Positions 7,271 through 63,622 of a stretch of 64,000 bases of DNA are shown here, in pieces (the first letter of the stretch is position 1; each line of letters opens with the position of its first letter). Under the pieces are notes generated by a model. That model was not told the origin of the DNA. It made no database searches and worked only from the letters and a program-made list of their open reading frames with translations. The position numbers and the translations under genes are program-made. The stretch covers positions 211,301-275,300 of the IMG/VR virus record IMGVR_UViG_3300020122_000238; one strand, written 5' to 3'.

Positions 7271-7305
7271 TCTAGAACGCCTACACTTCTGGTGTAGACG
7301 CCCTT

Positions 7306-7821
7306 GTGACCATCGACGCAAAGAAGCTCCGGGCGATTCACGAGATGTTCCTGTGCAAGTCTCCGGACTCGACTCAAGAACTCCTCTACACAGCATACCC
7401 CAAAGCACGAGGTTTCTCCCACAATGAACGGAATCTAGCGGTTCTCGACGCGACCATCATTTTGGGGCTAGCTCAGACGTGGCCGGAAAACGAAGAGGAA
7501 CCGAACCAGGTGTTTTTCTTGGTCCGGTCCGCAGACGAGCTGGTCTGGTGTCTGAAAAGGCTCAAGGAGATCGCCAGAGGCTTCTTCGAGCGCCTCAAGC
7601 AGATGCCCAGTCAGAAGGAGGCCAAGGTGCAAGCGGCAAAGCTCATTGCCTCTTTCTTCAACAACCTTCGTATCGGGATCTCCACTCAGTTTGACGAGCC
7701 CCCGGCAAACTGGGTGTCCTTTAGCTACCTCGCATCCGACCCGGTCCCGACCTGGATGCGAGACAAGCTTATCCCTGTGCCTGTGCAACAGGACATGTTC
7801 GCCGGAGTCGAGGAGCAGTGA
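7306..7821 (+). CDS. hypothetical protein
   Basis: GTG start 9 nt after GGTGTA. Confidence 0.7.
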   Translation: MTIDAKKLRAIHEMFLCKSPDSTQELLYTAYPKARGFSHNERNLAVLDATIILGLAQTWPENEEEPNQVFFLVRSADELVWCLKRLKEIARGFFERLKQMPSQKEAKVQAAKLIASFFNNLRIGISTQFDEPPANWVSFSYLASDPVPTWMRDKLIPVPVQQDMFAGVEEQ

Positions 7822-7913
7822 GTATGTCCAGAGAGTAGACTTTCACGTTTTCCGTCTAGTACGTGATCCAACATACTAGACGATACCCGTCGAAGTCGGT
7901 GTAACCTCTCCCC

Positions 7914-8729
7914 ATGTATGACGATGCCTCGCTGGACGATTACTGGGCCATGTTGCGGCCCCCCGAGCCCATGCCGTCCCCTGTGATCTCCCTTGAGACC
8001 GCTACCGAATGGCTGAAAACCATTGGGGCTCCGAGACATTCTCCCCTCTTGGTAGTCCCTGGTACATCTGTGGAGCGTTGCAGCGTTTTTCGGGCTCTGG
8101 GGAAAGTCGTGGACAGCACCTACTTCGAGTGCGACCTGGAAAACGCCTCCTGGTTAGAGGTGGGTCTCGACACGACCATCGCAGCTCTCGTCTCCTGTCA
8201 GGACCTCGATCTGGAGGGCACCATTCGAACGATGGCTGACACGTCCCATTACCTGGAGCATGACGTGTACCGGATTCTCTGGGAAATTCGGTTCTTGCGT
8301 CGTGAAGATCGGCATCAAGCGGACGAGCTGTTCGATATCTTCCGGCGATTGGTCCGTGACACACAACTTCGAGAACATGAGGTTCGGAGGCTCCGGGACC
8401 TTGGCATCTCGAAGTTCATCTTCTCTTTCCGGGAGAAAGTGGAAGTGCTGTGCTTCCTCCGCACCCTCGCCTCTCAGAACGAAATCCCGAGTCGCCTGGT
8501 TCTTTCTTTCGACGGGTTGGACCAGGCCATACAAGCTGAGAACAAGGGGGTTCTTCGCCAGCTCGTGATGCTCATCTCTGAAGTCCGACGTTGGACGCTA
8601 ATCACCAGTTGCCCGATTGGCATCCTCCTGGGTTTTTCAGCGGCCCGAAGTAATACCGCAAAACTCCGCAAGCTCAATCAGAATCTCACCGCCGAAATGG
8701 AGGCCGGGCTCGCCTGGACCAAGTCATGA
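7914..8729 (+). CDS. hypothetical protein with N-terminal acidic-W tag
   Basis: Begins MYDDASLDDYWAMLRPPEP; GGTGTA 10 nt upstream. Confidence 0.75.
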   Translation: MYDDASLDDYWAMLRPPEPMPSPVISLETATEWLKTIGAPRHSPLLVVPGTSVERCSVFRALGKVVDSTYFECDLENASWLEVGLDTTIAALVSCQDLDLEGTIRTMADTSHYLEHDVYRILWEIRFLRREDRHQADELFDIFRRLVRDTQLREHEVRRLRDLGISKFIFSFREKVEVLCFLRTLASQNEIPSRLVLSFDGLDQAIQAENKGVLRQLVMLISEVRRWTLITSCPIGILLGFSAARSNTAKLRKLNQNLTAEMEAGLAWTKS

Positions 8730-9235
8730 TCCGGATCAATTTCACTTGCGATGTTGTCGAACTCGAACCGCTCAACACTGACGAGTACGACGGCCTGCTC
8801 ATGGTGATCTCCACAGCCACCACCCCGATTGGAGGGAATGACCAGGTGAAACATCAGGATACGGCGACGGGGGAATGGGACGACATCCCTGTTTCTGCGG
8901 GGGCCCGCTCAACAGGGGGGTTGGTCTTCCGGGAGCGGCAAGTCACTCTGCCGGGGAAGTACCTGATCCGCTCCGCGATCCGCAATGGGAAAGAGCCCTT
9001 CAGGACTTTCGACCTCTTCCTCGAACATCTGGGAGACCGAAATGCCCGCCTCACGGTCGAGCCTGGAAGCACCCTTGCGTTCTGGATCATGGGCAACTTC
9101 GACCCGATCTTGATCGGTGCAGAGCGTACGATCATTCACATCGAGAATGGGCAAATCACGTTGATCGACACAGGGAAGCCGAGCGATCAGCGCCGTCCGA
9201 CCGCCTGGGAGAAAATGGACGACGACGACATCTAG
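8726..9235 (+). CDS. hypothetical protein with C-terminal PTAW-acidic tag
   Basis: Ends RRPTAWEKMDDDDI; ATGA-coupled. Confidence 0.8.
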   Translation: MIRINFTCDVVELEPLNTDEYDGLLMVISTATTPIGGNDQVKHQDTATGEWDDIPVSAGARSTGGLVFRERQVTLPGKYLIRSAIRNGKEPFRTFDLFLEHLGDRNARLTVEPGSTLAFWIMGNFDPILIGAERTIIHIENGQITLIDTGKPSDQRRPTAWEKMDDDDI

Positions 9236-9238
9236 CTC

Positions 9239-9859
9239 TTGGTGTCCATAGAAGGGATGCCCCCTCGTCACCATCAACTAGACCCCCAAAGTGGAATGGG
9301 TATGAGCCCTCCGCACTGCCTCGTCTGTCGGGCCAGCTTCAACCCCAACGAGCCGCTCACCTCATGCGACCATATCTCGATCGACGACCTGAAGATCCAG
9401 ACAGTCTACGACATCGACATGGACGAGAAGCCCATCGGCATGGGGCTCTCGGGGGAGTGCTTCAACCTGAAGTGCCCCGACTGCAAGCAGACCTTCATGC
9501 AGCTCCGCAAGTCCATGCACGGGCTCTTCTATGGGTGCCCTTCCTACCCCGCGTGCAAGGGCACTCACGGGGCCAATGCGGACGGCGCTCCGAAGGGCAT
9601 CCCTGGAGACTTCGCGACCCGTCAGGCCCGTATAGCGGTTCACCTGGTCTTCGATCGTATATGGAATCAACCTGGCTCCAACCTGACCCGAATCCAGGCC
9701 TATACCTGGATGGCTTGGGAAATGAGGCTGGGAATCATGGAAGCCCATATCGCACGCTTCGACATTGAAATGTGCGAGAAGCTCGTCTCCCTGGTGAAAA
9801 AACACTTCGGGGTCACGAACGCGTGGGAAGCCATCCTCGACGACTCCATCTGGGATTGA
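9239..9859 (+). CDS. topoisomerase C4 zinc-finger / DUF3268-like protein with C-terminal tag
   Basis: CPDC...FYGCPSYPAC, RQARIAVHLVFDRIW, AYTWM, HIARFD..C; ends TNAWEAILDDSIWD; exact start uncertain. Confidence 0.7.
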   Translation: MVSIEGMPPRHHQLDPQSGMGMSPPHCLVCRASFNPNEPLTSCDHISIDDLKIQTVYDIDMDEKPIGMGLSGECFNLKCPDCKQTFMQLRKSMHGLFYGCPSYPACKGTHGANADGAPKGIPGDFATRQARIAVHLVFDRIWNQPGSNLTRIQAYTWMAWEMRLGIMEAHIARFDIEMCEKLVSLVKKHFGVTNAWEAILDDSIWD

Positions 9860-9883
9860 CGTCGTAAGACGCTACCCCGAAGG

Positions 9884-10541: not shown

Positions 10542-10562
10542 GTGTACATCTACACAGGAAGA

Positions 10563-10605
10563 GGGAGGGGGATCAACCATATTTTCCCTGGTTGATCCCC
10601 CTCCC
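10563..10605. promoter_or_regulatory. back-to-back class A promoters forming a 17-bp inverted repeat
   Basis: GGGAGGGGGATCAACCA / TGGTTGATCCCCCTCCC; each TTGATC is 15 nt from (G/T)TGTA upstream of a divergent ATG. Confidence 0.75.
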
Positions 10606-10627
10606 GGTGTTTTTGTAAGACGACCAC

Positions 10628-11953
10628 ATGACGGCCACCCAAATGCACTTTCGGATCGATGGGGACGACTTCACTCGCATCGCCAGGGATTTCTTTCTGG
10701 AGGAGCGCCCTGATGCTGCGTGGCGCTTCATCACGGAAGGCCTGATGGGTGGTGAGCCAGGACAAGCCGAGCACTACGCCAAGCTCATCCTCAACGGAAA
10801 GACCAAGCTCATCGGCAACGAGACCGTGGGGCTGGAGCCGGTCGACGATGACGCGGCTGACTTTCAAAAGCAGGCCCGGTACATCTACGCCGGGCGCATC
10901 CGTAAAGAGGGCCGATGGTGGCGGCCGAGAGCCAAGGTCACGAACTTCGGCCCCGAGGATTGGCCGAAGGGAGCTGTGGCAGGTGATCAAGCCACCACGG
11001 CAGGCAAGGCGCATCTCCACGAGATCGGACGTCAGCGCGTCGCCCACTACGAGCTCAAGGACGAGCGCGTCTTCGATGTCGAAGGGGATTCCCTCATCTT
11101 CGAGCCGTGTGGAGAGCCACCGCATTGGTGGCCGGTTAACCGCACGACCGATGCCGCCCTCAAGGATTTCTTGGCCGCCGGGCGCAAGCTGGAGCTGGAT
11201 GGCTGGTCGCGTCGCTACCAGGTCCGTACCAAGAAGATCACCCCGCCGCCCCTCACGGACGACGAAAAGAGGGCCATTGCTGCCAAGCGGGCCAAGGAAG
11301 ACGAGGAAGATCGGAAGAAGATTGCAGCCTTCTCGATGAAGTGCACCATCATCGGGGCTCAGGTGGTGCTCCAAGCCGGCGAGGACACGTTCGACATGCC
11401 CTTGGAGGACGGGACGACGATCAAGGTCCCGCGGGCTCCGTTCGAAAACTGGGCCCTCCGGAACACGTCGCTGAGCCACCTCGCCCCGGCGTGGCAACCA
11501 ATATCCACGCCGGGGATGAAGATGCCGGGGGACGATGTCTTCCACACGGACTGGGTTCTCGGGGCCCAGCAGACGCTCAAGTCGGCCTATGAGGGCCCGG
11601 TCAAGGATGCCTCCTGGACTGCACGGTTCGATCTGCAACGGAAGCTGGGCAACTGGGAGTGTGGTGTCGTCGTCTCGGGGGAAGATGTGACGGGTGTGGT
11701 CGGCAAGGGCATCCTTGTGCTGTCCGACCTCGACCCCAAGAACCTCGAAGCCGTGATGAAGTCGAAAGCCGTCATCACGCAAGCGGGAGGGAGGCTCGCG
11801 CACCTGGCTCTGGTGGCCATGGAGCACTGCGTCCCGATCCTGCTTGTCCCCGACGCTCTGACCCGATACCCCAAGGGGGCGAAGTTGACCCTCTCGCCGA
11901 AAGACGGGAAGATCCACACGAGGGAGATCGGGGCCATCTACGACTGCGGTTGA
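10628..11953 (+). CDS. protein with C-terminal PEP-utilising enzyme mobile (phospho-His swivel) domain
   Basis: KAVITQAGGRLAHLALVAMEHCVPILLV...GAKLTLSPKDGKI matches the GGxxSHAAIVARE.GIP pattern; N-terminal ~330 aa unknown. Confidence 0.7.
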   Translation: MTATQMHFRIDGDDFTRIARDFFLEERPDAAWRFITEGLMGGEPGQAEHYAKLILNGKTKLIGNETVGLEPVDDDAADFQKQARYIYAGRIRKEGRWWRPRAKVTNFGPEDWPKGAVAGDQATTAGKAHLHEIGRQRVAHYELKDERVFDVEGDSLIFEPCGEPPHWWPVNRTTDAALKDFLAAGRKLELDGWSRRYQVRTKKITPPPLTDDEKRAIAAKRAKEDEEDRKKIAAFSMKCTIIGAQVVLQAGEDTFDMPLEDGTTIKVPRAPFENWALRNTSLSHLAPAWQPISTPGMKMPGDDVFHTDWVLGAQQTLKSAYEGPVKDASWTARFDLQRKLGNWECGVVVSGEDVTGVVGKGILVLSDLDPKNLEAVMKSKAVITQAGGRLAHLALVAMEHCVPILLVPDALTRYPKGAKLTLSPKDGKIHTREIGAIYDCG

Positions 11954-11983
11954 TCCCGGTCGCCCACTTGCTGTAGGTGAAAC

Positions 11984-12227: not shown

Positions 12228-12443
12228 ATGTCGACCCCTCAGCACCCTTCCCTGGAAGAACGCCTCAGTCTCTCTTGGGCCTCGTGGCTGCACTCGCATG
12301 AGGACGCAACACAGAAGTGCCCGGTGGTCCACTGCGAGCATAACCGCCCGCTTGGGACTATGCCGGGCTCCTCGTGTTGTTGCTCGTGGTGTCAAGGCCC
12401 GCCTTGGCCGATAAAAGAGCCGAATCCTAGTCCGAAGGTGTAA
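12228..12443 (+). CDS. small Cys/His-rich protein
   Basis: CPVVHCEH...CCCSWC; ends in GGTGTAA. Confidence 0.55.
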   Translation: MSTPQHPSLEERLSLSWASWLHSHEDATQKCPVVHCEHNRPLGTMPGSSCCCSWCQGPPWPIKEPNPSPKV

Positions 12444-13950: not shown

Positions 13951-14694
13951 TCATTGGCCAACGCCAGGCAGACGCACAAGTTTCAGGGCCCCGTTGTGGC
14001 TAACGAGAGGCGCCAGCTCGGGACTCCGGAACACGTCGAACAGGTGCATATCCTGACCGTCGACCGTGCAGCCCAACGAGACAAGGGTGACCGTCTGGCT
14101 GTAGTCCGTGTGCGCCATGTTGTGTCGCCACCCACAACCCTGAATGACGCGGACGAAGCGCCCCTTGGAGTCCTTCGAAAGAGAGACATTGGCTTCCCCT
14201 CGGATGCCCTTGTACCCCACGCCCTCGAAGTGCCAGCCGTAGTTCTCGACGAAGCCCGGGTGCGAGAGAATGGCGTTGTCGAGGACCCAGTGCTTGCCGA
14301 CGTTGCACACGAGGCCCTCAGGGTTCCCTTGCGCAGCGAGAGCCGTGTCAATCCGGCCGCTATGGGCGAGCATTGCAGCCGTTGAAGAATTGAACGGCTG
14401 AATCGAAGGCCCGAGAGTAACAACTTTCTGCGTCCAGATGAGATCCGCCAGCTTCGGGGTGAGTAGAGAACAGCCAAGAAGATCCGCGAGGTGCTGCTCC
14501 GTTTCGGCGGAAGCGTTGATCCGCACGCCCTCGATTTTGAGCGCATCCGAGAAGACCTGGAACTCGGCGTGGTGATCGCCATGGTCGGAGGTGACCGTGG
14601 ACCACAAGATAGGGTCAAAGGTCCCTTCTGCGACGAGTGCTCGGATTGCTTGTTCGCGAGCAGGGCCAGCGGACGGGGGAAGGTTCAGGCTCAT
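13951..14694 (-). CDS. hypothetical, enzyme-like (GKHWV, NYGWH, H...DYSQ)
   Basis: 247-aa ORF with clustered His/Trp/Asp motifs; family not assigned. Confidence 0.7.
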   Translation of the reverse strand: MSLNLPPSAGPAREQAIRALVAEGTFDPILWSTVTSDHGDHHAEFQVFSDALKIEGVRINASAETEQHLADLLGCSLLTPKLADLIWTQKVVTLGPSIQPFNSSTAAMLAHSGRIDTALAAQGNPEGLVCNVGKHWVLDNAILSHPGFVENYGWHFEGVGYKGIRGEANVSLSKDSKGRFVRVIQGCGWRHNMAHTDYSQTVTLVSLGCTVDGQDMHLFDVFRSPELAPLVSHNGALKLVRLPGVGQ

Positions 14695-14727
14695 ACTGAG
14701 GATCTTCCTAAAAAAACCCTATACACG

Positions 14728-15765
14728 ATGGCCATGATCGGACTCCGGGTGCCTCCCGAAACTGCTCAACTCCTGAAGCAGATCGACCTCAAGGGATTTG
14801 GGGTCCCCGAGCCTATGGATCAAGCGCACATCACGCTGCTCCATTTGGGGGATGATGTTCCGATTGAGTCTCTGACCGAGGCAATTCGGGTGTTGTACAC
14901 AGTGGCCTCGAAGACCAGACCATTTGCTGTGCAGACGAGCCGAGCGACAACCTTCCCGCCCCAAGATGGGAAGAAGACTCCCATGATTGCTCAGGTGGAC
15001 TCCAATGCCCTCCACGACTTCCACCGAGCCCTACAAGAAGCCTTCGAGGCTGCCGGGATCGACTTCTCGAAGAAGTGGCCCGAGTTCAAGCCTCATGTGA
15101 CTTTGGGGTATTCTAAAGACCCTTTGGTCGATGCAGACCACGTATTCGATGAGACTTTCCCTACGGTCGAGTGGGGCGCCCATGAAGCTGTGCTTTTTGG
15201 GGGTGACAAAGGAAAACAGACCATGATGGTAACAACCCCCTTCTCTCTGAGCCCCTTTCGCCAGGCTGTCCGACAGGCCATGTTCCGAGCTGCCAACCGG
15301 CCCTACGAACACGACCAGGAGGCTCAAAGCGAGAAGAAGGAGCTTCTTAAGAAGCTCGAATTGCTTTCCCAAGCAGCCTATGCTTCGGGAGACAACGCAA
15401 TGGCGTCCTTCGCAGAAAGTCTGGGGATGCAACTCGAACGAGCGGACACAGCCTGGAACTTCAGTCTCCCCCAAGAACGGAAACTCCGGGAAGGCCTACA
15501 ACAGTACCATCACCTGATGTCTCACCCGGCTGAGCTTGATCGACTGTTTGAAGAGAAGAACCGAGCCCCTCAAGTCAGCCCCGCGGAGCAGACGAGAAAC
15601 CTTCGGATCCGAATCAACCAGCTCCTCGATGCCGCGAAGCAAGATGGGGACAACTGGGTGATCAGTTTCGCAACCAATATCGGGAACATGGTGCGAAACA
15701 ACCGACAGCTATCTCCCGCTCAAAGCAACGCGCTGGAGAAAGCATTCAAGAAGTACCGTCTTTGA
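14728..15765 (+). CDS. 2H phosphoesterase (2'-5' RNA ligase/LigT-like) with helical C-terminal extension
   Basis: Two HxT motifs: AHITLLHLG and PHVTLGY. Confidence 0.8.
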   Translation: MAMIGLRVPPETAQLLKQIDLKGFGVPEPMDQAHITLLHLGDDVPIESLTEAIRVLYTVASKTRPFAVQTSRATTFPPQDGKKTPMIAQVDSNALHDFHRALQEAFEAAGIDFSKKWPEFKPHVTLGYSKDPLVDADHVFDETFPTVEWGAHEAVLFGGDKGKQTMMVTTPFSLSPFRQAVRQAMFRAANRPYEHDQEAQSEKKELLKKLELLSQAAYASGDNAMASFAESLGMQLERADTAWNFSLPQERKLREGLQQYHHLMSHPAELDRLFEEKNRAPQVSPAEQTRNLRIRINQLLDAAKQDGDNWVISFATNIGNMVRNNRQLSPAQSNALEKAFKKYRL

Positions 15766-16135: not shown

Positions 16136-16198
16136 CCCCGTCCCTACACCGACATTTTTATCGTTGCAGGATTACCCAAAGAATCGTAGGAAATAGGT

Positions 16199-17008: not shown

Positions 17009-17049
17009 TTTGGGGTCGTCTTGGGAGTCCCTTGGTGTACTCTCAAGGA

Positions 17050-17440
17050 ATGGACCTCGAAGCATTCTCAAGCCCGCAATGAGGACGAGCGCCTGGAAAT
17101 GCAAGTCATCCTCGTGGGGCAAAAGGGGTCTGTCCCCGAGACGGTCAAAGACATCATTCAGGTTGTCCCGGACTTGTTCGAGATGACCATCGAACAAGTC
17201 CGTGATCATCTGGCTCATGTCCAGCCTCAGATCCCCACGTTCATCATCTTGCCCGAAGTGGCAGAGGAGCTGCTGGGGTTGAATCTGACGCAGATATACG
17301 CCTGTGTGACACAGGCGGTTCTGGACCTCAAGCTCACCCCGAACGAGCCCAACGAGCCCAACGAGCTGGTCCGTGGCGTCAGGGACATGTCCGCGGAGCT
17401 GGTCCGCCTGCATCGCAATCGTCTCTTCCCGGCCAAATAG
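17050..17440 (+). CDS. hypothetical protein (possible +1 frameshift near start, or start at 17099)
   Basis: GGTGTA-N10-ATG 17050 is out of frame with the long ORF; there is an in-frame ATG at 17099. Confidence 0.6.
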
Positions 17441-17477
17441 GCTCAGGACAGCCATGGGGCGGTGTAGTCCCGCCTCC

Positions 17478-19203: not shown

Positions 19204-19263
19204 GTTTTTGGGGTACACCGAAGCCAGGGTCTTACTTCCCTGGTTTCGATGTACGGGGGATCC

Positions 19264-19809: not shown

Positions 19810-19864
19810 GTCGCCTCTATAGTCCGACCTGGATTCGGATCAACTGGTGTAAGTAAAAAAAGAT

Positions 19865-21002: not shown

Positions 21003-21045
21003 AATCTCTGAATGTCCGGGATAATTTCTGGTGTACTACGAGAAT

Positions 21046-23106: not shown

Positions 23107-23121
23107 ACAAGAGATTACACC

Positions 23122-27486: not shown

Positions 27487-27635
27487 TGTTTCCCGAGTTA
27501 CCTTTGAAAGGTGTACAATGTAGGCAAAAATGGCCTCGTTGAGGTTCTCCCTTCTATACACCGGGGAGCCCTGGGGGTAAAACAGGGCTCCCCGCACGTC
27601 GACCTAGAATACAAATTGCCGGTGTATAGGCCAAC

Positions 27636-29499: not shown

Positions 29500-29805
29500 A
29501 TGGCTCGTTTCTGTACACACTTTTCCGATATCGACTGCTGTGATGTCCCTTGTTCAAGGCAAGGCTGTGGACACGAATGCTCGTACCACGAAGAGAAGTT
29601 GTGCATTGGCGTGGGTTGTACCTGCACAGCCTTCGACAACACCCCCGTTGTCCGAGATCACCATGCTGAGGACCTCAGCTTCATCCTGGAGCTGAGGACT
29701 GCGACCCCCGAGAAGCTCCGCGAGCTTGAGATCAACCTGCACTTTGGGGGTCCACAGTGGCAGCGCATCGCAGTTGAACGAGAAGTCTCAAAAAGATCGG
29801 TGTAG
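29500..29805 (+). CDS. Cys-rich hypothetical protein
   Basis: CGHECSYH...C...CTCTAF. Confidence 0.65.
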   Translation: MARFCTHFSDIDCCDVPCSRQGCGHECSYHEEKLCIGVGCTCTAFDNTPVVRDHHAEDLSFILELRTATPEKLRELEINLHFGGPQWQRIAVEREVSKRSV

Positions 29806-29814
29806 TCGCTCGGG

Positions 29815-30977: not shown

Positions 30978-30987
30978 CTTGAGGATC

Positions 30988-31001
30988 TACACCGCGGTGT
31001 A
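30988..31001. promoter_or_regulatory. palindromic bidirectional class B element TACACC-GC-GGTGTA
   Basis: Exactly 10 nt from ATG 30977 (-) and from ATG 31012 (+). Confidence 0.8.
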
Positions 31002-31011: not shown

Positions 31012-31731
31012 ATGGGATCGACCCCCAAAAAGACCCCTGTGAAGTACCACTCCTGGTGGACCGAGAAAGCCGTACCTCATCGGAACATGTTGATGGTGAG
31101 GTACGACTACGGGCACTCCAGGGTCGATAGATCCTTGTACGGATGTCTGGTCGTCGGAGACGACCAGACGCTCCTCTGGCTCAGCAGTGAGGAGATCCGG
31201 GAAAAGTGGAAGCCCTTCCGCGTACCCTTCTCGGCAGTTATTCCTCTGGGGGTGTGGCCCCAGTGGGTGACTCGACGAGATGTCCAATGGCACACAGCGC
31301 CAGACCATCCTCGGCGAATGACCATCGTCTCGTACAAGCCCAAGAGCTTCTGGCTTGCAACCACCACCGTGGTCGAGCCCTTCGAGGGCCCAAGATTCCA
31401 AGTCTACAGAGCAACGCAGAGTTTCAAGGTTGATCACGAGATGGTGCAATACGGGGACCATCTCACCCTCGATAGAGACTACAACGTGTGGACCGTGCGT
31501 AAGAAGAGCATCGCTCGGTTCTGCAACCGGGAGATCACAGCCTTCCTTGCTATGCAATACCTCATCCCCGTGATTCAACCGAGCGGGATGCCCTTCGATT
31601 GGAGCATTCAGAAGTTCACCACACGCTTCTGGAGTCTCCACACTTTCGCTCAGAACCATCGGCCTCTGATGCCCTCAAAACCGACCGCTTGGGACGTTGT
31701 GATGGCCGACGAATTCGAGGAAATGGTGTAG
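31012..31731 (+). CDS. hypothetical protein with C-terminal tag
   Basis: Ends KPTAWDVVMADEFEEMV. Confidence 0.75.
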   Translation: MGSTPKKTPVKYHSWWTEKAVPHRNMLMVRYDYGHSRVDRSLYGCLVVGDDQTLLWLSSEEIREKWKPFRVPFSAVIPLGVWPQWVTRRDVQWHTAPDHPRRMTIVSYKPKSFWLATTTVVEPFEGPRFQVYRATQSFKVDHEMVQYGDHLTLDRDYNVWTVRKKSIARFCNREITAFLAMQYLIPVIQPSGMPFDWSIQKFTTRFWSLHTFAQNHRPLMPSKPTAWDVVMADEFEEMV

Positions 31732-33321: not shown

Positions 33322-33362
33322 GGAGAGCCCTACACCACCTTTCCGCGGTGTAGGGCAGGAAG

Positions 33363-33836: not shown

Positions 33837-33923
33837 CCTTACAGGCTACGTCTGTGTTACCCTCGCCTCGAAACCCTGCCAGATCAGCGCGATCTAGGGC
33901 AAAGCCGGTGTATAGGAGTACTC

Positions 33924-37878: not shown

Positions 37879-37904
37879 GAGGACCTCTTACACCAAGACG
37901 ACCC

Positions 37905-38234: not shown

Positions 38235-38245
38235 CCCCAGGGGCT

Positions 38246-38272
38246 ACACCAACCAGGTCAGAGCGATTCCGT
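38246..38272 (-). pseudogene. relic original 3' end of the DUF3307 gene (GIALTWLV*)
   Basis: gga atc gct ctg acc tgg ttg gtg tag encodes the same peptide as the current DUF3307 terminus. Confidence 0.75.
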
Positions 38273-39078: not shown

Positions 39079-39633
39079 CTACACCAAGGCTGCCCTCAAA
39101 TATCCGGTGGCAGTCTCCAGACGCTCCAAAGTGTCCCCCAGCAAACCAAGCGCCAGATTGCAGCTATGACAGAGAAGACCCCGGACCTTGCCCGTTGTGT
39201 GGCAGTGGTCGACGGCCCAAGAGGAGTTGTCCTTCTGTCCAGGTTTGTCTGCTCGGCAAATGGCACAACGTCCGCCTTGAGCTTCAAGCATCCTGGCGTA
39301 GTCGTCAGGGGTCAAGCCCTTCTTCTTGAGTCGTGAAACCCACGACTTGTAAGTGTTTTCGTTGCGATGCCCCTTCCGATACTCTTGGGCCTCAACGAGG
39401 TGCTCAGAATGGTACTTGCGCATCCGAGCCCGACGAGCATCAGAATTCTCGTGGTATCTGCGGTTGTTGTCCGAGATGCGCTTCTCGTGGTGCTTCCTGA
39501 AGTCGGCCTTCGATTGGAGGCGACGACAAGGCGGGCACCTCGATTGCGGCTTCATCACGCCGCGTTTCTTGATGAGACCGAAGACTTCCAACGGGAATGG
39601 GAGGGTACAGCCGGGGCAGATTTTCTCTTCCAT
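39079..39633 (-). CDS. endonuclease VII-like HNH protein
   Basis: CPGC...CPPC; QGGRCAIC...VDHCHTTGKVRGLLCHSCNLALG. Confidence 0.85.
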   Translation of the reverse strand: MEEKICPGCTLPFPLEVFGLIKKRGVMKPQSRCPPCRRLQSKADFRKHHEKRISDNNRRYHENSDARRARMRKYHSEHLVEAQEYRKGHRNENTYKSWVSRLKKKGLTPDDYARMLEAQGGRCAICRADKPGQKDNSSWAVDHCHTTGKVRGLLCHSCNLALGLLGDTLERLETATGYLRAALV

Positions 39634-40796: not shown

Positions 40797-40842
40797 ACCG
40801 CTCAACTACACCAGCTACGAGACAATCAGAGGGAAGCCCCGT

Positions 40843-42227: not shown

Positions 42228-42900
42228 CTTTTGGGTTTACACCGAATTCGGGGGAATCGAGCTGGTCCCAAGATGTTGGACGTCGATTGTACTCCGCCTC
42301 AGCCCGACGGCGCTTTTTCTCTTCTCGACGCCGGACCTGGTCATCGGTGAGAGACGGAGTATTTGCAGCTTGAAGCTCGACGCCATCAACCCAAGGGGGG
42401 CGTTGGGGCGTATATTCCTCAAGAACCACGTCAACCGCAAAAGACAGCGTTGCAACCTGTACTTCTCTTGGGGTTCTTTCGGCGGAACCAGCGAAGTTCA
42501 CCTCGAAGGGACCATCTTGCCGTTCTTGCAGGATGGTAAAGGCATCCTGAAATAAAGTGATATCTCTTTCGATGATGGTGTGTGTACCCCCCAAAATGTG
42601 TACTCCAAACCTGTCAATGGAAGAGACCATTGACAGGTTACATACAAGTCCAGCTTGTCGGAGCTGTCGGCTGGCTTCAAAAGGAGAAATAGGCACTACT
42701 ACTTCCGACACTGGAGCAGGCTGCGGCGGAGGAGACCAACCATGGGGCTTGCGAATCACCCGCGTGAGCACCCCGTTCTGCTCTGAGAAGGCCTGGCTGC
42801 TTTGAATCGCCTCGTGCTCATGCACAGAAGCGAGAGACGGAAGGTCAACCCACCCGGCACGGGCCGCACGAGACTGGACGCAGTAGAAGCGAGAAGGCAT
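42220..42900 (-). CDS. hypothetical protein with near-C-terminal tag
   Basis: RRPTSWDQLDSPEF; GGTGTA-N10-ATG. Confidence 0.75.
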   Translation of the reverse strand: MPSRFYCVQSRAARAGWVDLPSLASVHEHEAIQSSQAFSEQNGVLTRVIRKPHGWSPPPQPAPVSEVVVPISPFEASRQLRQAGLVCNLSMVSSIDRFGVHILGGTHTIIERDITLFQDAFTILQERQDGPFEVNFAGSAERTPREVQVATLSFAVDVVLEEYTPQRPPWVDGVELQAANTPSLTDDQVRRREEKKRRRAEAEYNRRPTSWDQLDSPEFGVNPKGD

Positions 42901-42909: not shown

Positions 42910-43245
42910 CTACACCGCGGGGTATGTCGACCTTTTGGGTATCTCGACCCCCACCCGGGCCGTGGAGATCAAAACAGCAACAAGAGCCTCCCGTTGATTC
43001 GGTGTGAGGCTCGTGGGGTCGATCTCGACGGGCCCCGATTCAATGCTTCGTTCCGCCAGCGTCAGAATGTCGAGCGTCGGAAGAGCCTTGATCAGCTTCC
43101 CCCATCGAGACACAGCAAGCCGGCGACGGTCGTGCTCCACTTCCCACAAGTAAGGAGCTGAAAGACCCATAATCTTCCCAAGCCCCCTGAGACTCAATCC
43201 CACAGCTTGACGTTGCTCACGAATGAGGCTTCCGACTGTTTGCAT
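42910..43245 (-). CDS. XRE-family helix-turn-helix regulator
   Basis: LIREQRQAVGLSLRGLGKIMGLSAPYLWEVEHDRR. Confidence 0.8.
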   Translation of the reverse strand: MQTVGSLIREQRQAVGLSLRGLGKIMGLSAPYLWEVEHDRRRLAVSRWGKLIKALPTLDILTLAERSIESGPVEIDPTSLTPNQREALVAVLISTARVGVEIPKRSTYPAV

Positions 43246-45955: not shown

Positions 45956-46189
45956 TTACACCACAAAGCCACGATACTCGATCGCGTCCAGCTTGGGGGT
46001 GCCTTCTCCGCGAAGGATGAGCCCTACCTCATCCTTCGGTCTCGGGTAGCGGGGGAAGTCGATGCCGACGAGCTGCCAGGACCGATCCCCTTGATGCAAG
46101 AAATCTCCCACTCTGATGGGGGTCTCGGGCAACCCCTTGATGAGAGCGATCATCCGGTCCTTGGTGTGGAAAATCGCGAAGATGTTCAA
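45956..46189 (-). CDS. hypothetical protein
   Basis: Coupled ORF. Confidence 0.65.
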   Translation of the reverse strand: MNIFAIFHTKDRMIALIKGLPETPIRVGDFLHQGDRSWQLVGIDFPRYPRPKDEVGLILRGEGTPKLDAIEYRGFVV

Positions 46190-46890: not shown

Positions 46891-47298
46891 TTACACCGGG
46901 TCGTTGATCCCCAACGCGGCCCTCTCTGCCGAATCGAGCTTGGCGAGTGCTCTCTGACGCACCTGCTCCACGGACATGATGCGAGGCAGCACAATGACCG
47001 GCTCCCCGATCTTGATGATGTGCCCGACCATTCCCTCATCCAACAAAACGCGGACCGAACGGACAAATCCCGTACCCCCAGCCACACCTCTGCCCCGCGC
47101 AAATTCCAGCGCCGTGCTCTCATCTTCGGTGACGCAAATGTGGTAGGTCCCCTGGGTTGCGGGGGTACGGCATCCACGTACCTCGAAGGCGTCGATGATA
47201 CGCACAAGATGTGGGAGCGGAGGAGGGGGGGGCAGAATGGTCATGGAGGATGGGGGGGAGACCTCTGTCTCTCGGTCTGAATAATCTTCGTCCAACAT
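46891..47298 (-). CDS. hypothetical protein
   Basis: GGGAGGA Shine-Dalgarno; acidic then Pro-rich N-terminus. Confidence 0.7.
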   Translation of the reverse strand: MLDEDYSDRETEVSPPSSMTILPPPPPLPHLVRIIDAFEVRGCRTPATQGTYHICVTEDESTALEFARGRGVAGGTGFVRSVRVLLDEGMVGHIIKIGEPVIVLPRIMSVEQVRQRALAKLDSAERAALGINDPV

Positions 47299-47391
47299 AA
47301 ATCCTCCCTGTACCCTACACCCAAGACAGAAAATCCTGGACGTCGAATTTCTAACACAGCCAAAAAGTCTGGCATGGTGTAAAATAAACCC

Positions 47392-49429: not shown

Positions 49430-49578
49430 GGTTGATCTCCTCCTAGAGATGACTCTCAGGAATAATAAGAGAAACCCCACAGGAAAACCCTTACGCTCTG
49501 GGGACAGCACGATTATTACCGTGTCGGTGGAATACACGCGGCGGTTGATCGGGAGCAGTTGGGGGTGTACTAGGAACC

Positions 49579-50195: not shown

Positions 50196-50295
50196 TGGGC
50201 AGACCTACCAGGCTGCTCGTGCCCTCATGCTCCTTGCCGACGAACTCATCACGCTCTGAGGTTGATCCCGGCTTCGGCGTACCTGTAGTACCCCC

Positions 50296-51266: not shown

Positions 51267-51319
51267 CCTCTTGCCACTACACCAGTTGATCCGCGGCCCC
51301 CCAACCTTGTAGAAAAGCC

Positions 51320-54793: not shown

Positions 54794-54886
54794 GAGTAAG
54801 TAATACACCGGAGGGCATTTTTAGTCTCCTTGTATCGAACGTCTAACTAGAAGGTACACCTTCAACTTCGTCCCACAGGAGACTAC

Positions 54887-57336: not shown

Positions 57337-57423
57337 TTCTGGACAGAGGGACCTTCGCAAAGAGATCGACGAGCCGGAGTTCCGCTCGGTCCCTGCCGGC
57401 TGAAGTCGGTGTAGAAACGCGGG

Positions 57424-58834: not shown

Positions 58835-58868
58835 GCTTTTGGGGGTCCGTGGTGTAAGGTTGGGGGTC

Positions 58869-59156
58869 ATGTCTGAAACGACCCCCACGAGCTGCACACA
58901 CGACTGGAAGATCCAGCCGGACGCCTCCGACCGTAGGGTGACCCGCTACCAGTGCGCGACATGCCAGCGCTGGGGCTACCGGATGTGGACCGCGAAAGAG
59001 AACGGGCGAATACAGCTCTACACATCGCCGACCCCCGTCGCCTCCTGGTACAAGCTCCCCGAGTCGCCTCCTCGCCCCGCCAAGAAGAGGATCAACCCTG
59101 AGGAAGTCGTCGAGACTTTCGTGCCAGATTTCGAACGTTGGCGAAATCCGAGTTGA
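58869..59156 (+). CDS. hypothetical protein (CxH..CxxC)
   Basis: TTGAGC-N15-GTGTA upstream. Confidence 0.7.
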   Translation: MSETTPTSCTHDWKIQPDASDRRVTRYQCATCQRWGYRMWTAKENGRIQLYTSPTPVASWYKLPESPPRPAKKRINPEEVVETFVPDFERWRNPS

Positions 59157-59186
59157 TCCGCTTCGTCCTCGCCTTGTAGGATACTC

Positions 59187-59474: not shown

Positions 59475-59508
59475 TTGATCGGCTGTGTCTTATGGCTGTA
59501 GGAGGTTC

Positions 59509-60362: not shown

Positions 60363-60403
60363 TTGGTTGATCCGTGAAGCGCTTGACCTGTATGAAGGGG
60401 ACT

Positions 60404-60652: not shown

Positions 60653-60747
60653 TCCGTATGCCCCTCAACATCGCCCCGCTGTGGAGGTTGAATTGACGGA
60701 AGAAGTATCGCGGTTGATCCGTACGACCCTCGCGCTGTAGTCCCATC

Positions 60748-62239: not shown

Positions 62240-62369
62240 GGGTTCAATACCCCCTTTGGACGTGCCCCTATCACGCTGGGAACCAGCCGCTGGATGCTCT
62301 CAGCGCCTTCCGTCATGGCTTCTGTACGCCCATGGAAAAGGGCCTTTGCCGCAAGATCCAGGATTGACC

Positions 62370-62714
62370 ATGCAAGACAAAGCCGCTCTCCTCGCCCGCG
62401 CTGCTCAAGTTCGCGAAATGCTCATCGAAGAGCTGGCTCATTTCGGAAGCACCTTGGTGGAATGCTCCAACCGAGAGTACGTCGTGGCGCACTACAAAAT
62501 CTTGAACCGAGAAATGGGCGTGCTGCACTTCGGGGCCACTCGCGATGATGCGGAGGCCGCTCTCTGCGAGCTGGGATGGACAACCCTGGTCCACAGGTAT
62601 CAAGGCAGCTATCGCACCTGGTACGTCTGCCCTGACGACGGAAAGCCCCTTCTCCTCAACGAGGCCATGGAGCGCATCCTGTTGGGATCGATCCACATCG
62701 ACATCCCGGTGTAA
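62370..62714 (+). CDS. hypothetical protein
   Basis: ORF from MQDKAALL; ends GGTGTAA. Confidence 0.7.
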   Translation: MQDKAALLARAAQVREMLIEELAHFGSTLVECSNREYVVAHYKILNREMGVLHFGATRDDAEAALCELGWTTLVHRYQGSYRTWYVCPDDGKPLLLNEAMERILLGSIHIDIPV

Positions 62715-62722
62715 GGGTTGAT

Positions 62723-63034
62723 ATGCCCACCGACCTCGTTCTTGCTCAGAAAATCCTCGATTTCGTGAATGCCGAGTGCGGCAACTCGTTCCTGACACTG
62801 AAGGACATTCAGAGCATCGCCAAAGACGAGCCTGTCTTAGCCGCGTGTAAGTACTGGCAGTTCTTGCGGCTGATCCTCGAAGAGGGCGCCGTCAACTTCG
62901 GCTTCCTCAACCAGCACATCTTCATGCGTCGCCAGTACAAAGCCCTTCTGGCGAAGATCGAGCGATGGGACGCCTGGGGAGATGAGAACCTCCCCGGCTA
63001 CGATGGTGCTCACACCTACTTCCTCGGTTTCTAA
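62723..63034 (+). CDS. hypothetical protein
   Basis: TCGATC-N15-GTGTA upstream. Confidence 0.7.
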   Translation: MPTDLVLAQKILDFVNAECGNSFLTLKDIQSIAKDEPVLAACKYWQFLRLILEEGAVNFGFLNQHIFMRRQYKALLAKIERWDAWGDENLPGYDGAHTYFLGF

Positions 63035-63036
63035 CC

Positions 63037-63327
63037 ATGAGCCCGTACCGCGCTTCCCCACCTCTCCCCACTCAAGACCCCAAGCCTTTCAAGAGAAGCT
63101 GGAGAGCCAGGCTTCGACGCTTTTTGCGCCACTTCGCGGGGGCCTACAAGGGGAGCTTCCTCGCTCGCTACCCGGTGCGCTGCCCCGAGTGTGGGAAGCG
63201 AAGCTGGGACCCCCACGAGGAGCGTAAGACCCCCTACAAGCACCAAATGCGATGGGCTCGGGTTGTGATGAACGCCTACCGCTGCGGGCACCGTGGGACC
63301 CTCTCGTGTACGGTCAACTTCAGCTAG
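63037..63327 (+). CDS. basic zinc-ribbon protein
   Basis: CPECG...CGH...C. Confidence 0.6.
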   Translation: MSPYRASPPLPTQDPKPFKRSWRARLRRFLRHFAGAYKGSFLARYPVRCPECGKRSWDPHEERKTPYKHQMRWARVVMNAYRCGHRGTLSCTVNFS

Positions 63328-63343
63328 CGGTGTAAAAAGGGCC

Positions 63344-63622
63344 ATGCCGAAAGAAATCGGAGTATATCGAGCATCCCCTATGAAGGCGCACGTCTGGGAC
63401 ACTGAGTACGTGGACGGCGGAGCCGTCGGGGATGGGTACTTTTACCGCTGTCAGGGCTGTGGAGCTTCAGGCGGCCCTGTGTGGGACGAATCCAAGCCCA
63501 AACCCACCAACTGGACGTTTCTCGCAGGAACGGGACTTCAGCTCGATCCTCATGATTGTGAGGCGGCAAGAGCACAGATCAAAAACTATCGGGCAGACGT
63601 TGAAAAGGAATGGGCTCGCTGA
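63344..63622 (+). CDS. hypothetical protein (CQGC)
   Basis: GGTGTA-N9-ATG. Confidence 0.65.
   Translation: MPKEIGVYRASPMKAHVWDTEYVDGGAVGDGYFYRCQGCGASGGPVWDESKPKPTNWTFLAGTGLQLDPHDCEAARAQIKNYRADVEKEWAR

What the first reader, a model, noticed from the sequence alone, without database searches (positions are those of the whole stretch)
7291..63344. Class B element GGTGTA 9-12 nt before about 30 start codons, often doubling as the upstream stop
Seen before starts at 7306, 7914, 12453, 16135, 17050, 17478, 19865, 21046, 23106, 27636, 29815, 30977, 31012, 31741, 33321, 33363, 33924, 37878, 38234, 39070, 42227, 42900, 45946, 46881, 47392, 51266, 54793, 57424, 58869, 62723 and 63344; the modal spacer is 10 nt. 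Many upstream genes end in Val-stop because GTG TAG/TAA lies within the element. At 30988-31001 it is a palindrome serving two divergent genes at 10 nt each. There is usually no -35 element, but degenerate ones occur (TTGAGC 58831, TCGATC 62688). Inference: a -10-only promoter analogous to T4 late promoters, or an extended -10 version of class A in which GG replaces the -35. An unusual translation-initiation signal is the alternative. Many tagged genes are class B, suggesting a co-expressed cohort.
Basis: partly seen in the sequence, partly recalled or inferred. Interest (0 to 1): 0.68.

Follow-up and report, generated by a model that had tools for sequence, protein, structure and literature searches.

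The report
Start-locked GGTGTA promoter of huge phages
About a third of the genes in this stretch of an uncultured huge phage carry the exact word GGTGTA ten bases before their start codon; it is most likely a one-box promoter that starts the messenger RNA at the start codon itself (leaderless mRNA), a known way of expressing genes used here with a new consensus and on an unusual scale.

Summary
GGTGTA occurs 67 times in the window against 12 expected. All 31 listed starts check out, and I found about 4 more.

- **Source and spacing.** The window is the end of a 275-kb fragment of a huge phage of roughly 470 kb. Across the contig the gap from motif to ATG peaks sharply at 10 nt.
- **Conservation.** The motif (consensus Y-GGTGTA, no -35 box) is found in all ten relatives tested that have at least 56% identity in the baseplate protein. 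It is absent in more distant kin.
- **Evidence for a -10-type promoter that makes leaderless mRNAs:**
  - The TA sits at -12/-11 from the ATG.
  - In a 48%-GC relative the motif extends to GGTG-TAATAT.
  - Motif genes lack the canonical Shine-Dalgarno signal that the other genes carry.
  - Motif genes are enriched at the heads of transcription units, including divergent pairs only 34 and 41 nt apart.
  - Orthologues keep the motif while the flanks diverge.
  - A divergent phage sigma factor is found in the same genomes as the motif.
- **Limits.** No transcript 5' ends could be examined, so the promoter reading is inferred, at about 0.6. An RNA-level start-associated translation signal remains the main rival.
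- **T4 comparison.** The motif genes are non-structural, so the T4 late-promoter analogy does not fit.
- **Verdict.** A new variant of a known kind.

The parts
4031..4036 (+). GGTGTA, 12-nt spacer, ATG 4049 (50 aa; doubtful gene). Its TAA closes the kinase-like ORF 3123-4037.
7291..7296 (+). GGTGTA, 9-nt spacer, GTG 7306 (171 aa)
7898..7903 (+). GGTGTA, 10-nt spacer, ATG 7914 (271 aa)
12437..12442 (+). GGTGTA, 10-nt spacer, ATG 12453 (152 aa). Its TAA closes an upstream ORF.
16145..16150 (-). GGTGTA, 9-nt spacer, ATG 16135 (129 aa); leading gene of a divergent pair
17034..17039 (+). GGTGTA, 10-nt spacer, ATG 17050. This ATG opens only a 10-codon ORF; the longer ORF here is in another frame.
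17461..17466 (+). GGTGTA, 11-nt spacer, ATG 17478 (145 aa)
19214..19219 (-).
19846..19851 (+). GGTGTA, 13-nt spacer, ATG 19865 (160 aa); leading gene of a divergent pair
21030..21035 (+). GGTGTA, 10-nt spacer, ATG 21046 (107 aa)
23116..23121 (-). GGTGTA, 9-nt spacer, ATG 23106 (131 aa)
27621..27626 (+). GGTGTA, 9-nt spacer, ATG 27636 (129 aa)
29799..29804 (+). GGTGTA, 10-nt spacer, ATG 29815 (190 aa). Its TAG closes an upstream open frame of 173 codons.
30988..30993 (-). GGTGTA (left arm of the palindrome), 10-nt spacer, ATG 30977 (197 aa)
30996..31001 (+). GGTGTA (right arm of the palindrome), 10-nt spacer, ATG 31012 (239 aa)
31725..31730 (+). GGTGTA, 10-nt spacer, ATG 31741 (181 aa). Its TAG closes an upstream open frame of 269 codons.
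33331..33336 (-). GGTGTA, 9-nt spacer, ATG 33321 (238 aa); divergent pair with 41 nt between starts
33347..33352 (+). GGTGTA, 10-nt spacer, ATG 33363 (157 aa); partner in the same divergent pair
33907..33912 (+). GGTGTA, 11-nt spacer, ATG 33924 (141 aa)
37889..37894 (-). GGTGTA, 10-nt spacer, ATG 37878 (363 aa, DUF4419). The orthologue in G002 also carries the motif.
38245..38250 (-). GGTGTA, 10-nt spacer, ATG 38234 (109 aa). The orthologue in G002 also carries the motif.
39080..39085 (-). GGTGTA, 9-nt spacer, GTG 39070 (270 aa). Its TAG closes an upstream ORF.
40807..40812 (-). GGTGTA, 10-nt spacer, ATG 40796 (44 aa; doubtful gene)
42238..42243 (-). GGTGTA, 10-nt spacer, GTG 42227 (134 aa). 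Its TAA closes an upstream ORF.
42911..42916 (-). GGTGTA, 10-nt spacer, ATG 42900 (226 aa). Its TAG closes an upstream ORF.
45957..45962 (-). GGTGTA, 10-nt spacer, ATG 45946 (260 aa). Its TAA closes an upstream ORF.
46892..46897 (-). GGTGTA, 10-nt spacer, GTG 46881 (231 aa). Its TAA closes an upstream ORF.
47376..47381 (+). GGTGTA, 10-nt spacer, ATG 47392 (247 aa, Bax1-I family); leading gene of a divergent pair
49564..49569 (+). A TTGATC box lies 15 nt before the TGTA.
51278..51283 (-). GGTGTA, 11-nt spacer, ATG 51266 (140 aa)
54804..54809 (-). GGTGTA, 10-nt spacer, ATG 54793 (188 aa)
57408..57413 (+). GGTGTA, 10-nt spacer, ATG 57424 (47 aa)
58851..58856 (+). GGTGTA, 12-nt spacer, ATG 58869 (95 aa). 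TTGAGC lies 16 nt before the TGTA.
62708..62713 (+). GGTGTA, 9-nt spacer, ATG 62723 (103 aa). TCGATC lies 16 nt before the TGTA.
63329..63334 (+). GGTGTA, 9-nt spacer, ATG 63344 (92 aa)

Best explanation
Y-GGTGTA is a single-box promoter without a -35 element. Its last two bases, TA, are the first two bases of a -10 hexamer. The hexamer is placed so that RNA polymerase starts at, or within a few bases of, the A of the start codon. The gene is then expressed from a leaderless mRNA that needs no Shine-Dalgarno sequence.

The preceding GGTG acts as an upstream extension of the -10 element and makes a -35 box dispensable. The motif heads short transcription units of non-structural genes. The genes that follow in a unit use ordinary Shine-Dalgarno sites.

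The factor that reads the motif is probably a phage-encoded divergent sigma factor found in every relative that has the motif. The host's own sigma is the alternative.

**Shown:** the motif, its position, its conservation, the lack of SD, and its enrichment at unit heads.

**Inferred:** that it is read on DNA by RNA polymerase, where the transcript starts, and which sigma reads it.
For: 1. **Geometry.** With the modal 10-nt spacer, the TA lies at -12/-11 from the A of the ATG. That is the position of the 'TA-like' -10 signal that marks leaderless genes in bacteria (PMC3160421). In Deinococcus radiodurans a -10 motif next to the ORF was shown by experiment to be a sufficient promoter, with a spacing requirement (PMC12340547).
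2. **A -10 hexamer appears in a lower-GC relative.** In G012 (48% GC) the logo continues after GGTG as T A A(0.57) T(0.57) A(0.52) T(0.41), that is TAATAT.
3. **No SD on motif genes.** Genes without the motif have a canonical SD core (GGAG/GAGG/AGGA) peaking 5-8 nt before the start in G000, 6-10 nt in G002 and 6-7 nt in G012. Class B genes have little or none.
4. **Enrichment where a promoter is needed.**
   - Leading genes of divergent pairs: G012 18/80 against 30/457, odds ratio 4.1, p = 4e-5. G000, classes A and B together, 24/58 against 69/292, p = 0.009.
   - Codirectional genes with more than 15 nt to the upstream gene: A or B in 55 of 158, against 14 of 134 for tighter gaps.
   - Two divergent pairs have only 34 and 41 nt between the start codons and a motif on each side, which leaves no room for other promoters between them.
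5. **Purifying selection.** 12 of 22 class B genes keep the motif in their G002 orthologue (median 49% aa identity over all 139 orthologue pairs), against 6 of 116 other genes (p = 1e-7). Spacer and flanks are not conserved.
6. **Clade-wide signal.** GGTGTA-N10-ATG occurs 9-51 times per relative genome in ten relatives, against 1-5 for the reversed control.
7. **ATG bias.** ATG is the start in 95% of class A+B genes against 79% of strong-SD genes (p = 0.006); in G002, 87% against 69% (p = 2e-5).
8. **A second element that behaves as a promoter is start-locked too.** Class A is a bipartite element (TTGATC-N16-TGTAG), also at a fixed distance from the ATG. Its -35-like box changes to TGGATC in G002 while the spacing stays the same.
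9. **A co-distributed sigma factor.**
   - A divergent sigma-70-family protein (alignment A1) scores 29.6 bits against Pfam Sigma70_r2 in the G003 member. Its best fold matches are almost all sigma domain 2, Z 8.1-6.0.
   - It is present in 9 of 9 motif-bearing relatives tested and in 0 of 5 records without the motif.
   - Its gene sits behind a class A element in G001 and G002.
10. **Phage precedent.** Thermus phage phiYS40 makes most of its middle and late mRNAs leaderless (PMC3594737).
Against: - No transcript 5' end was seen.
- In the GC-rich genomes the hexamer lacks the T at its sixth position (22% T in G000), which is a key contact for sigma-70-type -10 recognition.
- TG sits at -14/-13, not at the -15/-14 of the classical extended -10.
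- The motif is almost always exact (44 exact copies against an excess of about 25 one-mismatch copies at the 10-nt spacer). That is more typical of a specific protein site than of a -10 box.
- Almost no copies sit further upstream with an SD-bearing leader, although SD works in this system. So the motif is tied to the start codon more tightly than a promoter needs to be.
- Upstream ORFs almost never read through the motif (no gaps between -8 and +8). A pure DNA signal does not obviously require this.
- Class A and class B place TGTA 2 nt apart relative to the ATG.
- The motif is not avoided inside genes more than other TA-containing hexamers.
- There is no association with upstream hairpins or terminators.
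- The co-occurrence with the sigma factor is confounded by phylogeny.
Confidence: 0.6

Rival explanations
1. The motif works on the RNA. It would be a start-associated translation signal, independent of Shine-Dalgarno pairing, read by the ribosome or by a phage-encoded factor. This would resemble the start-associated sequences (SAS) of cluster K mycobacteriophages. Transcripts would start further upstream.
For: - The motif is strictly tied to the start codon, with almost no copies elsewhere.
- Upstream ORFs stop in or before the motif and never run through it.
- There is an ATG bias, and the motif is restricted to non-structural genes.
- All four traits are also reported for SAS, whose function is still unknown (PMC3203893).
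- The near-exact conservation of six or seven bases fits a specific binding partner.
Against: - Only GGUG could pair with the conserved 16S 3' end (established knowledge of the anti-SD). It ends 12 nt before the ATG, while the SD-led genes of this genome imply it should end about 2-5 nt before it.
- The flank is pyrimidine-rich, not GGA.
- The spacer next to the ATG is G+C-rich.
- The TAATAT extension in G012 looks like a -10 box.
- The divergent pairs with 34-41 nt between starts would need both promoters to lie inside each other's coding sequence.
- The enrichment at unit heads has no obvious reason under this model.
Confidence: 0.2
2. The motif is the operator of a phage DNA-binding regulator (repressor or activator). 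It would sit over the core of otherwise unrecognised promoters and give a co-regulated cohort.
For: - The conservation is exact and asymmetric over 7 bp.
- The phage encodes a conserved 236-aa protein with a sigma region-4-type helix-turn-helix domain.
- The cohort of genes is conserved between phages.
Against: - No other promoter element is detectable around the sites.
- The element's TA and its extension match a -10 box in the right place.
- A 6-7 bp asymmetric site is short for a dimeric regulator.
Confidence: 0.08
3. The motif is an RNA processing site. A phage or host endoribonuclease would cut polycistronic RNA at GGUGUA and release mRNAs with a very short leader.
For: - Upstream ORFs always end at or before the TAR of the motif. 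A cut there would require this, so that the upstream message keeps its stop codon.
- The motif genes lack SD.
Against: - The same rule holds for class A, where upstream ORFs stop at the TGA of TTGATC, 30 nt before the ATG. Class A has the two-box geometry of a promoter.
- Leading genes of divergent pairs carry the motif although nothing upstream needs processing.
- No conserved structure or Rfam family is present.
Confidence: 0.05

Closest known systems
[quoted passage not shown]
   Same: - A -10-type element with its first T about 12 nt before the start codon.
- No SD on these genes and an ordinary SD on the others.
- The -10 box alone is sufficient, and a -35 box at the right spacing strengthens it. 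That parallels class B and class A here.
   Different: - The consensus there is TANNNT. Here it is Y-GGTG-TA, with an invariant 4-nt upstream extension, and in GC-rich members no T at the sixth position.
- Here it is a phage signal shared by a phage clade spanning 45-64% GC, possibly read by a phage sigma factor.
- TSS not mapped here.
Thermus phage phiYS40 middle and late genes (leaderless mRNAs; PMC3594737 citing the primary work)
   Same: A large phage that expresses a large share of its genes as leaderless mRNAs.
   Different: - In phiYS40 the class is middle and late. Here the block around the only recognised tail gene is nearly free of the motif.
- The promoter consensus differs.
- The phiYS40 result rests on mapped 5' ends; this one does not.
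Phage T4 late promoters (TATAAATA, read by the gp55 sigma; established knowledge)
   Same: A single -10-region box without a -35 element, many copies per genome, read by a phage-encoded sigma-like factor. It often overlaps the stop codon of the upstream gene.
   Different: - The sequence differs.
- T4 late transcripts have leaders of variable length with SD sites.
- T4 late genes are structural; the genes here are not.
- I did not look for a gp55 homologue.
Start-associated sequences (SAS) of cluster K mycobacteriophages (PMC3203893)
   Same: - A short asymmetric repeat just before many start codons, restricted to non-structural genes.
- ATG strongly preferred.
- The upstream stop codon is sometimes inside the repeat.
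- Conserved across related phages.
- Function unproven.
   Different: SAS is 13 bp, contains the SD core AGGAG and lies 3-7 bp from the start. The motif here has no SD core and lies 10 nt away, at -10-box distance.
Classical extended -10 promoters (TGnTATAAT; established knowledge)
   Same: An upstream extension of the -10 hexamer that contains TG and makes the -35 box dispensable.
   Different: TG abuts the hexamer (-14/-13) with no intervening base, and two further G residues are invariant.

Membership tests
TA-led (leaderless) -10 signal | TA of the -10 hexamer about 12/11 nt before the translation start | tested here: met
   The spacer mode of 10 nt puts T at -12 and A at -11. The same holds in G002 and G012.
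TA-led (leaderless) -10 signal | TANNNT consensus (T at the sixth position) | tested here: inconclusive
   G000: T 22% against 21% background, so not met. G012: T 41% against about 26% background, with A-T-A before it, so partly met.
TA-led (leaderless) -10 signal | No Shine-Dalgarno on these genes while other genes have one | tested here: met
   The SD-core peak 5-8 nt before the start is present in non-motif genes and absent or weak in class B, in three genomes.
TA-led (leaderless) -10 signal | Transcript 5' end at the start codon | not testable with these tools
No transcript contigs were found.
TA-led (leaderless) -10 signal | Sits at the head of transcription units | tested here: met
   Enriched at leading genes of divergent pairs and at codirectional genes with more than 15 nt to the upstream gene.
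Classical extended -10 promoter | TG at -15/-14, one base before the hexamer | tested here: not met
   TG is at -14/-13 and directly abuts the TA.
T4-type late promoter | TATAAATA box before late (structural) genes | tested here: not met
   The sequence differs. The motif genes are replication, repair and accessory genes, and the block around the only recognised tail gene is nearly free of the motif.
Shine-Dalgarno / ribosome-binding site | Complementarity to the 16S 3' end at SD distance | tested here: not met
   Only GGUG can pair, and it ends 12 nt before the ATG. The canonical SD cores of the same genome end 5-8 nt before the start. The anti-SD sequence is taken from established knowledge; the host 16S is unknown.
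Mycobacteriophage SAS | 13-bp repeat containing AGGAG, 3-7 bp before the start | tested here: not met
   The motif has 6-7 conserved bases, no SD core and a 9-12 nt spacer.
Sigma-70 family (protein family A1 of the relatives) | Sigma region 2 fold and sequence signature | tested here: inconclusive
   - Pfam Sigma70_r2 at 29.6 bits (cut-off 24) in the G003 member only.
- Weak TIGR02937 matches in the G001, G002 and G003 members.
- The model has pLDDT 59.
- Foldseek found nothing significant.
- In VIA-align all of the top 16 matches are sigma domain 2, Z 8.1-6.0, which is the middling range.

The most novel reading that the evidence does not exclude
A sigma factor specific to this clade of huge phages reads Y-GGTGTA as a complete one-box promoter. 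It thereby launches about a fifth of the phage's genes as leaderless mRNAs. This would be a phage-encoded programme that links a private promoter code to SD-independent translation. It would sit downstream of an earlier class of bipartite, also leaderless, promoters (class A) that drive the sigma gene itself.
Probability: 0.3. Interest if true: 0.7.

Novelty: new variant of a known kind. Interest (0 to 1): 0.55.

Why it matters
- **Gene calling.** If the reading is right, one in five genes of a widespread clade of uncultured 300-530 kb phages can be given an exact start codon, and probably a transcription start, from sequence alone. That would improve gene calling in these genomes; at one locus (46881) the source's gene call starts elsewhere than the motif-linked start.
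- **Regulatory map.** It gives a testable scheme: class A, then the sigma factor, then class B.
- **Biology.** Leaderless expression would be a major strategy of huge phages, not a peculiarity of Thermus phages.
- **Experiments.** It offers a compact promoter and sigma pair for study.
- **If the rival is right.** It would be a new translation signal independent of Shine-Dalgarno pairing.

Tried and rejected
**Tests of the motif that gave nothing**
- Terminator or hairpin just upstream of the motif. A strict hairpin-plus-T-run search found 1 of 64 sites, and the folding energy of the 45 nt upstream was no lower than in controls.
- A -35 box. TTG near the canonical position is not significant in three genomes. 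Class A boxes at N16 before class B are at chance level.
- Avoidance of the motif inside genes, sense and antisense, as a test of DNA-level against RNA-level function. The raw depletion disappears in G000 when compared with other TA-containing hexamers. It is only modest for the antisense word in G002 and G012. Inconclusive.
- C at -1 as a sign of a start site. It is general to all gene classes.

**Host and relatives**
- Megablast against phage records found nothing.
- The PurA-like protein found no relative in bacterial genomes.
- DUF4419 found no viral relatives.
- The host remains unknown. The nearest cultured kin is an Acidobacteriota phage, and it lacks the motif.

**Expression data**

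**Other**
- Rfam: no family in the window.
- Literature search for the word GGTGTA with phage and promoter: nothing relevant.
- Profile searches against PDB sequences with both sigma-like families: no match.
- Foldseek on the sigma-like model: nothing significant.

Full report
**What the window is.**
- The window is the last 64 kb of a single 275,300-bp viral contig (58.4% G+C, no N).
- The collection classes the contig as linear and about 58% complete, so the phage genome should be roughly 470 kb.
- It encodes no tRNA.
- Megablast finds no near relative among deposited phages.
- By protein, its baseplate wedge is 36% identical to that of an uncultured 485-kb phage (LR745208.1). It is 29% identical to that of the Acidobacteriota jumbo phage Tunturi_5 (PMC11924767).
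- In IMG/VR it belongs to a large set of contigs of 300-530 kb: 42 loci, with baseplate identity from 97% down to 30%.
- The host is unknown.

- GGTGTA occurs 67 times in the window against 12.1 expected.
- Over the whole contig, the distance from the motif to the next ATG has a needle-sharp peak at 10 nt (44 cases). The shoulders are at 9 (11 cases), 11 (7) and 12 (7), over a background of about 0-6 per offset.
A few qualifications are given in the observation check. The most notable is that the ATG at 17050 opens only a ten-codon frame.
- A k-mer scan upstream of naively called genes, run without looking for the motif in particular, puts GGTGTA and its overlapping words at the top, at 16-32 times expectation (GGTGTA itself 25 times).
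- The logo is Y-GGTGTA (C or T before it in 65 of 69 sites). It carries no information further upstream and no T at the sixth position of a would-be -10 hexamer.
- Most functional copies are exact: 44 exact, against an excess of about 25 one-mismatch copies at the 10-nt offset.

- The same contig holds a bipartite element, (G)GTTGATC, 16 nt, TGTAG(G/A), then the ATG. TGTA lies 8 nt before the ATG.
- The window has 13 exact copies of TTGATC-N16-TGTA against 0.08 expected.
- In relative G002 (529 kb, rated complete, 64% G+C) the first box is GATGGATC instead. The 16-nt spacing, the TGTAG and the distance to the ATG are unchanged.
- Two boxes at a fixed distance with an unconserved spacer, one of them changing between phages, is what a promoter read by a two-domain protein looks like.
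- Because the ATG follows 8 nt after TGTA, class A genes must also have essentially no leader.
- Relative G012 has class B but no class A.

**How the other genes start.**
- I called genes with a self-trained dicodon model: 352 in this contig, 736 in G002 and 538 in G012. These calls are rough, especially the starts.
- Genes without either element show a clear peak of canonical Shine-Dalgarno cores (GGAG, GAGG, AGGA, AAGG). The peak lies 5-8 nt before the start in this contig, 6-10 nt in G002 and 6-7 nt in G012.
- Class B genes show little or none.
- So the host ribosome uses the ordinary anti-SD. GGTG, the only part of the motif that could pair with it, ends 12 nt before the ATG, whereas the SD-led genes imply it should end about 2-5 nt before it.
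- This makes an rRNA-pairing ribosome-binding site unlikely.

**Where the motif sits.**
- Class A or B is found at 24 of 58 leading genes of divergent pairs, against 69 of 292 codirectional genes (p = 0.009). Spurious small ORFs dilute this effect.
- In the lower-GC G012, where gene calls are cleaner, class B is at 18 of 80 leading genes against 30 of 457 (odds ratio 4.1, p = 4e-5).
- Along the contig the pattern is typically one A or B gene followed by SD-led or tightly coupled genes.
- Two divergent pairs have a motif on each side and only 34 and 41 nt between the two start codons. Each gene of such a pair needs its own promoter, and nothing else conserved is there.
- Upstream ORFs never read through either element. 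For class B the smallest gaps are 8-12 nt, where the stop is the TAA/TAG made by the motif's TA and the next base. For class A they are 30 nt, where the stop is the TGA inside TTGATC. Non-motif genes commonly overlap by 1-4 nt.
- I read this as promoter-plus-gene modules packed stop-to-box. It is also what an RNA-level signal or a processing site would predict, so it does not decide between the models.

**Conservation.**
- GGTGTA-N10-ATG occurs 9-51 times per genome in ten relatives with at least 56% baseplate identity (45-64% G+C). The reversed control gives 1-5.
- The pattern is at control level in three more distant contigs, in LR745208.1 and in Tunturi_5.
- Among 139 reciprocal-best orthologue pairs between this contig and G002 (median 49% identity), 12 of 22 class B genes are class B in G002 too, against 6 of 116 other genes (p = 1e-7). 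Only the six bases and the ATG are conserved, not the spacer or flanks.
- In G012 (48% G+C) the logo continues past GGTG as TAATAT, a recognisable -10 hexamer, preceded by a T-rich stretch.
- This extension is the most direct sequence evidence that the TA of the motif is the start of a -10 box whose remaining positions have been relaxed in the GC-rich genomes.

**Which genes.**
- Class B precedes an NAD-dependent DNA ligase, an SbcD-like phosphoesterase, an SNF2 helicase, two AAA ATPases (one ClpX-like), a DHH phosphoesterase, a transglycosylase, a Bax1-I-family membrane protein, DUF4419 and many small ORFs.
- The block around the only recognised tail gene (the baseplate wedge; about 100-135 kb of the contig) has almost none.
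- The comparison with T4 late promoters therefore fails on gene class.

**A candidate reader of the motif.**
- Pfam Sigma70_r2, T7-type RNA polymerase and the beta-subunit domain find nothing in this contig.
- A broader sigma model finds a conserved 236-aa protein with a sigma region-4 helix-turn-helix at contig 23072-23782 (Sigma70_r4, 49.8 bits).
- It also finds, in the relatives, a family of about 300-aa proteins (alignment A1). The G003 member passes Pfam Sigma70_r2 at 29.6 bits.
- The predicted structure of the member from the 97%-identical sibling contig is of modest quality (pLDDT 59).
- Foldseek finds nothing significant with it.
- The exhaustive structural aligner returns sigma domain 2 for every one of its top 16 matches (Z 8.1-6.0, about 80 residues, rmsd about 3 A). 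These Z values are in the range the tool calls middling, so I treat it as a probable, not proven, sigma factor.
- Family A1 is present in all nine motif-bearing relatives examined and in none of five records without the motif. This fits but is confounded by descent.
- It is not on this contig, presumably because 42% of the genome is missing.
- Its gene follows a class A element in the sibling contig (leaderless layout). It also does in G002, where the ATG lies 22 nt after TGTA and follows an SD-like GAGGGA.
- That G002 case shows class A working at a distance from the ATG, as a promoter should.
- It suggests, but does not show, a cascade: class A, then sigma, then class B.

**Comparison with what is known.**
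- A -10-like signal whose first T lies about 12 nt before the start codon is the accepted mark of leaderless genes in bacteria (PMC3160421).
- In Deinococcus radiodurans such a motif was shown by mutation to be the promoter, sufficient alone, dependent on spacing, and strengthened by a -35 box 17 bp upstream (PMC12340547).
- Thermus phage phiYS40 makes most middle and late mRNAs leaderless (PMC3594737).
- PhiKZ, by contrast, has no leaderless transcript (PMC8244752).
- The present element differs from these in four ways. Its consensus has an invariant GGTG abutting TA. It is nearly always exact. It belongs to a phage clade, not to a bacterial phylum. It is used on a large scale (64 of 352 genes here, 143 of 736 in G002).
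- Phenomenologically it also resembles the start-associated sequences of cluster K mycobacteriophages in several traits: non-structural genes, ATG bias and embedded upstream stops. The function of SAS is unknown and thought to be translational (PMC3203893).
- The ATG bias I found therefore cannot be taken as specific to leaderless mRNAs.

**Verdict.**
- The finding is real, strongly non-random, conserved and under selection.
- The best reading is a one-box promoter that yields leaderless mRNAs (about 0.6).
- An RNA-level start-associated signal is the main rival (about 0.2).
- The decisive datum, the 5' ends of the transcripts, could not be obtained here.
- Several indirect tests were uninformative: upstream hairpins, a -35 box, and motif avoidance inside genes.

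Noticed in passing
window 540-565, 1165-1190, 10551-10576(-), 10592-10617, 11950-11975, 23408-23433, 36141-36166(-), 50262-50287, 51286-51311, 59153-59178, 59475-59500, 60367-60392, 60714-60739: Class A element: TTGATC, 16 nt, TGTA, usually followed by G(G/A) and an ATG 8 nt after TGTA. There are 13 exact copies against 0.08 expected. In relative G002 the first box is TGGATC at the same spacing; relative G012 lacks the class. Upstream ORFs end at the TGA inside TTGATC (gap of exactly 30 nt in 6 cases).
   Followed up: partly
window 17034-17082: The GGTGTA at 17034 is followed at 10 nt by an ATG that opens only ten codons. The stop overlaps another ATG (ATGA), and the 139-aa ORF here is in a different frame. 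This could be a mini-ORF, a frameshift in the assembly or a miscalled gene. A GC-rich hairpin lies just upstream.
   Followed up: partly
window 47298-47321 (- strand): A GGTGTA lies 20 nt before the ATG at 47298, with an SD-like GGGAGGA in between. It is the leading gene of a divergent pair. This is a rare case of the motif with a leader.
   Followed up: no
contig 23072-23782 (outside the window; L086:1369-2079): A 236-aa protein whose N-terminal half is a sigma-70 region-4 helix-turn-helix (Pfam Sigma70_r4, 49.8 bits), with a weaker second match behind it and no region 2. It is conserved at about 60% identity in G002 and G012. It could be a -35-box reader or a regulator.
   Followed up: partly
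L111:1164-2072(-) in the 97%-identical sibling contig; orthologues at L112:300-1481, L114:771-1640 and L109:16078-17067: A divergent sigma-70-like family with an insertion of about 100 residues in domain 2. It is present in all motif-bearing relatives tested and absent from this incomplete contig. Its gene is preceded by a class A element. A second sigma-like family lies next to it in G003 and G012 (L114:1667-2494, L109:15244-16056).
   Followed up: partly
L013 (Tunturi_5), about 27560-27600, 28625-28670, 28945-28990 (- strand): The Acidobacteriota phage Tunturi_5 has its own repeated promoter-like element: CATCTTT, about 13 nt, TGTAGGTTGA. It is followed by a leader of about 14-19 nt with an SD. 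So TGTAGG recurs as a -10-region word in a distant relative, but there it comes with a normal leader.
   Followed up: no
G011 (relative, 51% G+C), many sites listed: In this relative the motif is very often the longer word GGTGTATATAC, about ten copies with identical first 11 bases. This could reflect recent spread of a promoter cassette or a stricter consensus.
   Followed up: no
window 1807-3123, 3123-4037, 5262-6389, 14491-15765, 47392-48135: Auxiliary genes: adenylosuccinate synthetase-like; a weak protein-kinase-like domain; a protein with a peptidoglycan-binding domain; a 2',5'-RNA-ligase/LigT-type phosphoesterase with a weak Acb1 (anti-CBASS) match; and a Bax1-I-family membrane protein.
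   Followed up: no
contig 29680-33072 (outside the window; L002:9680-13072): A 1130-aa protein interrupted by an intein with a LAGLIDADG endonuclease domain. The host protein was not identified.
   Followed up: no
whole contig: There are no tRNA genes in 275 kb, while the distant jumbo relative Tunturi_5 is reported to carry 43.
   Followed up: no
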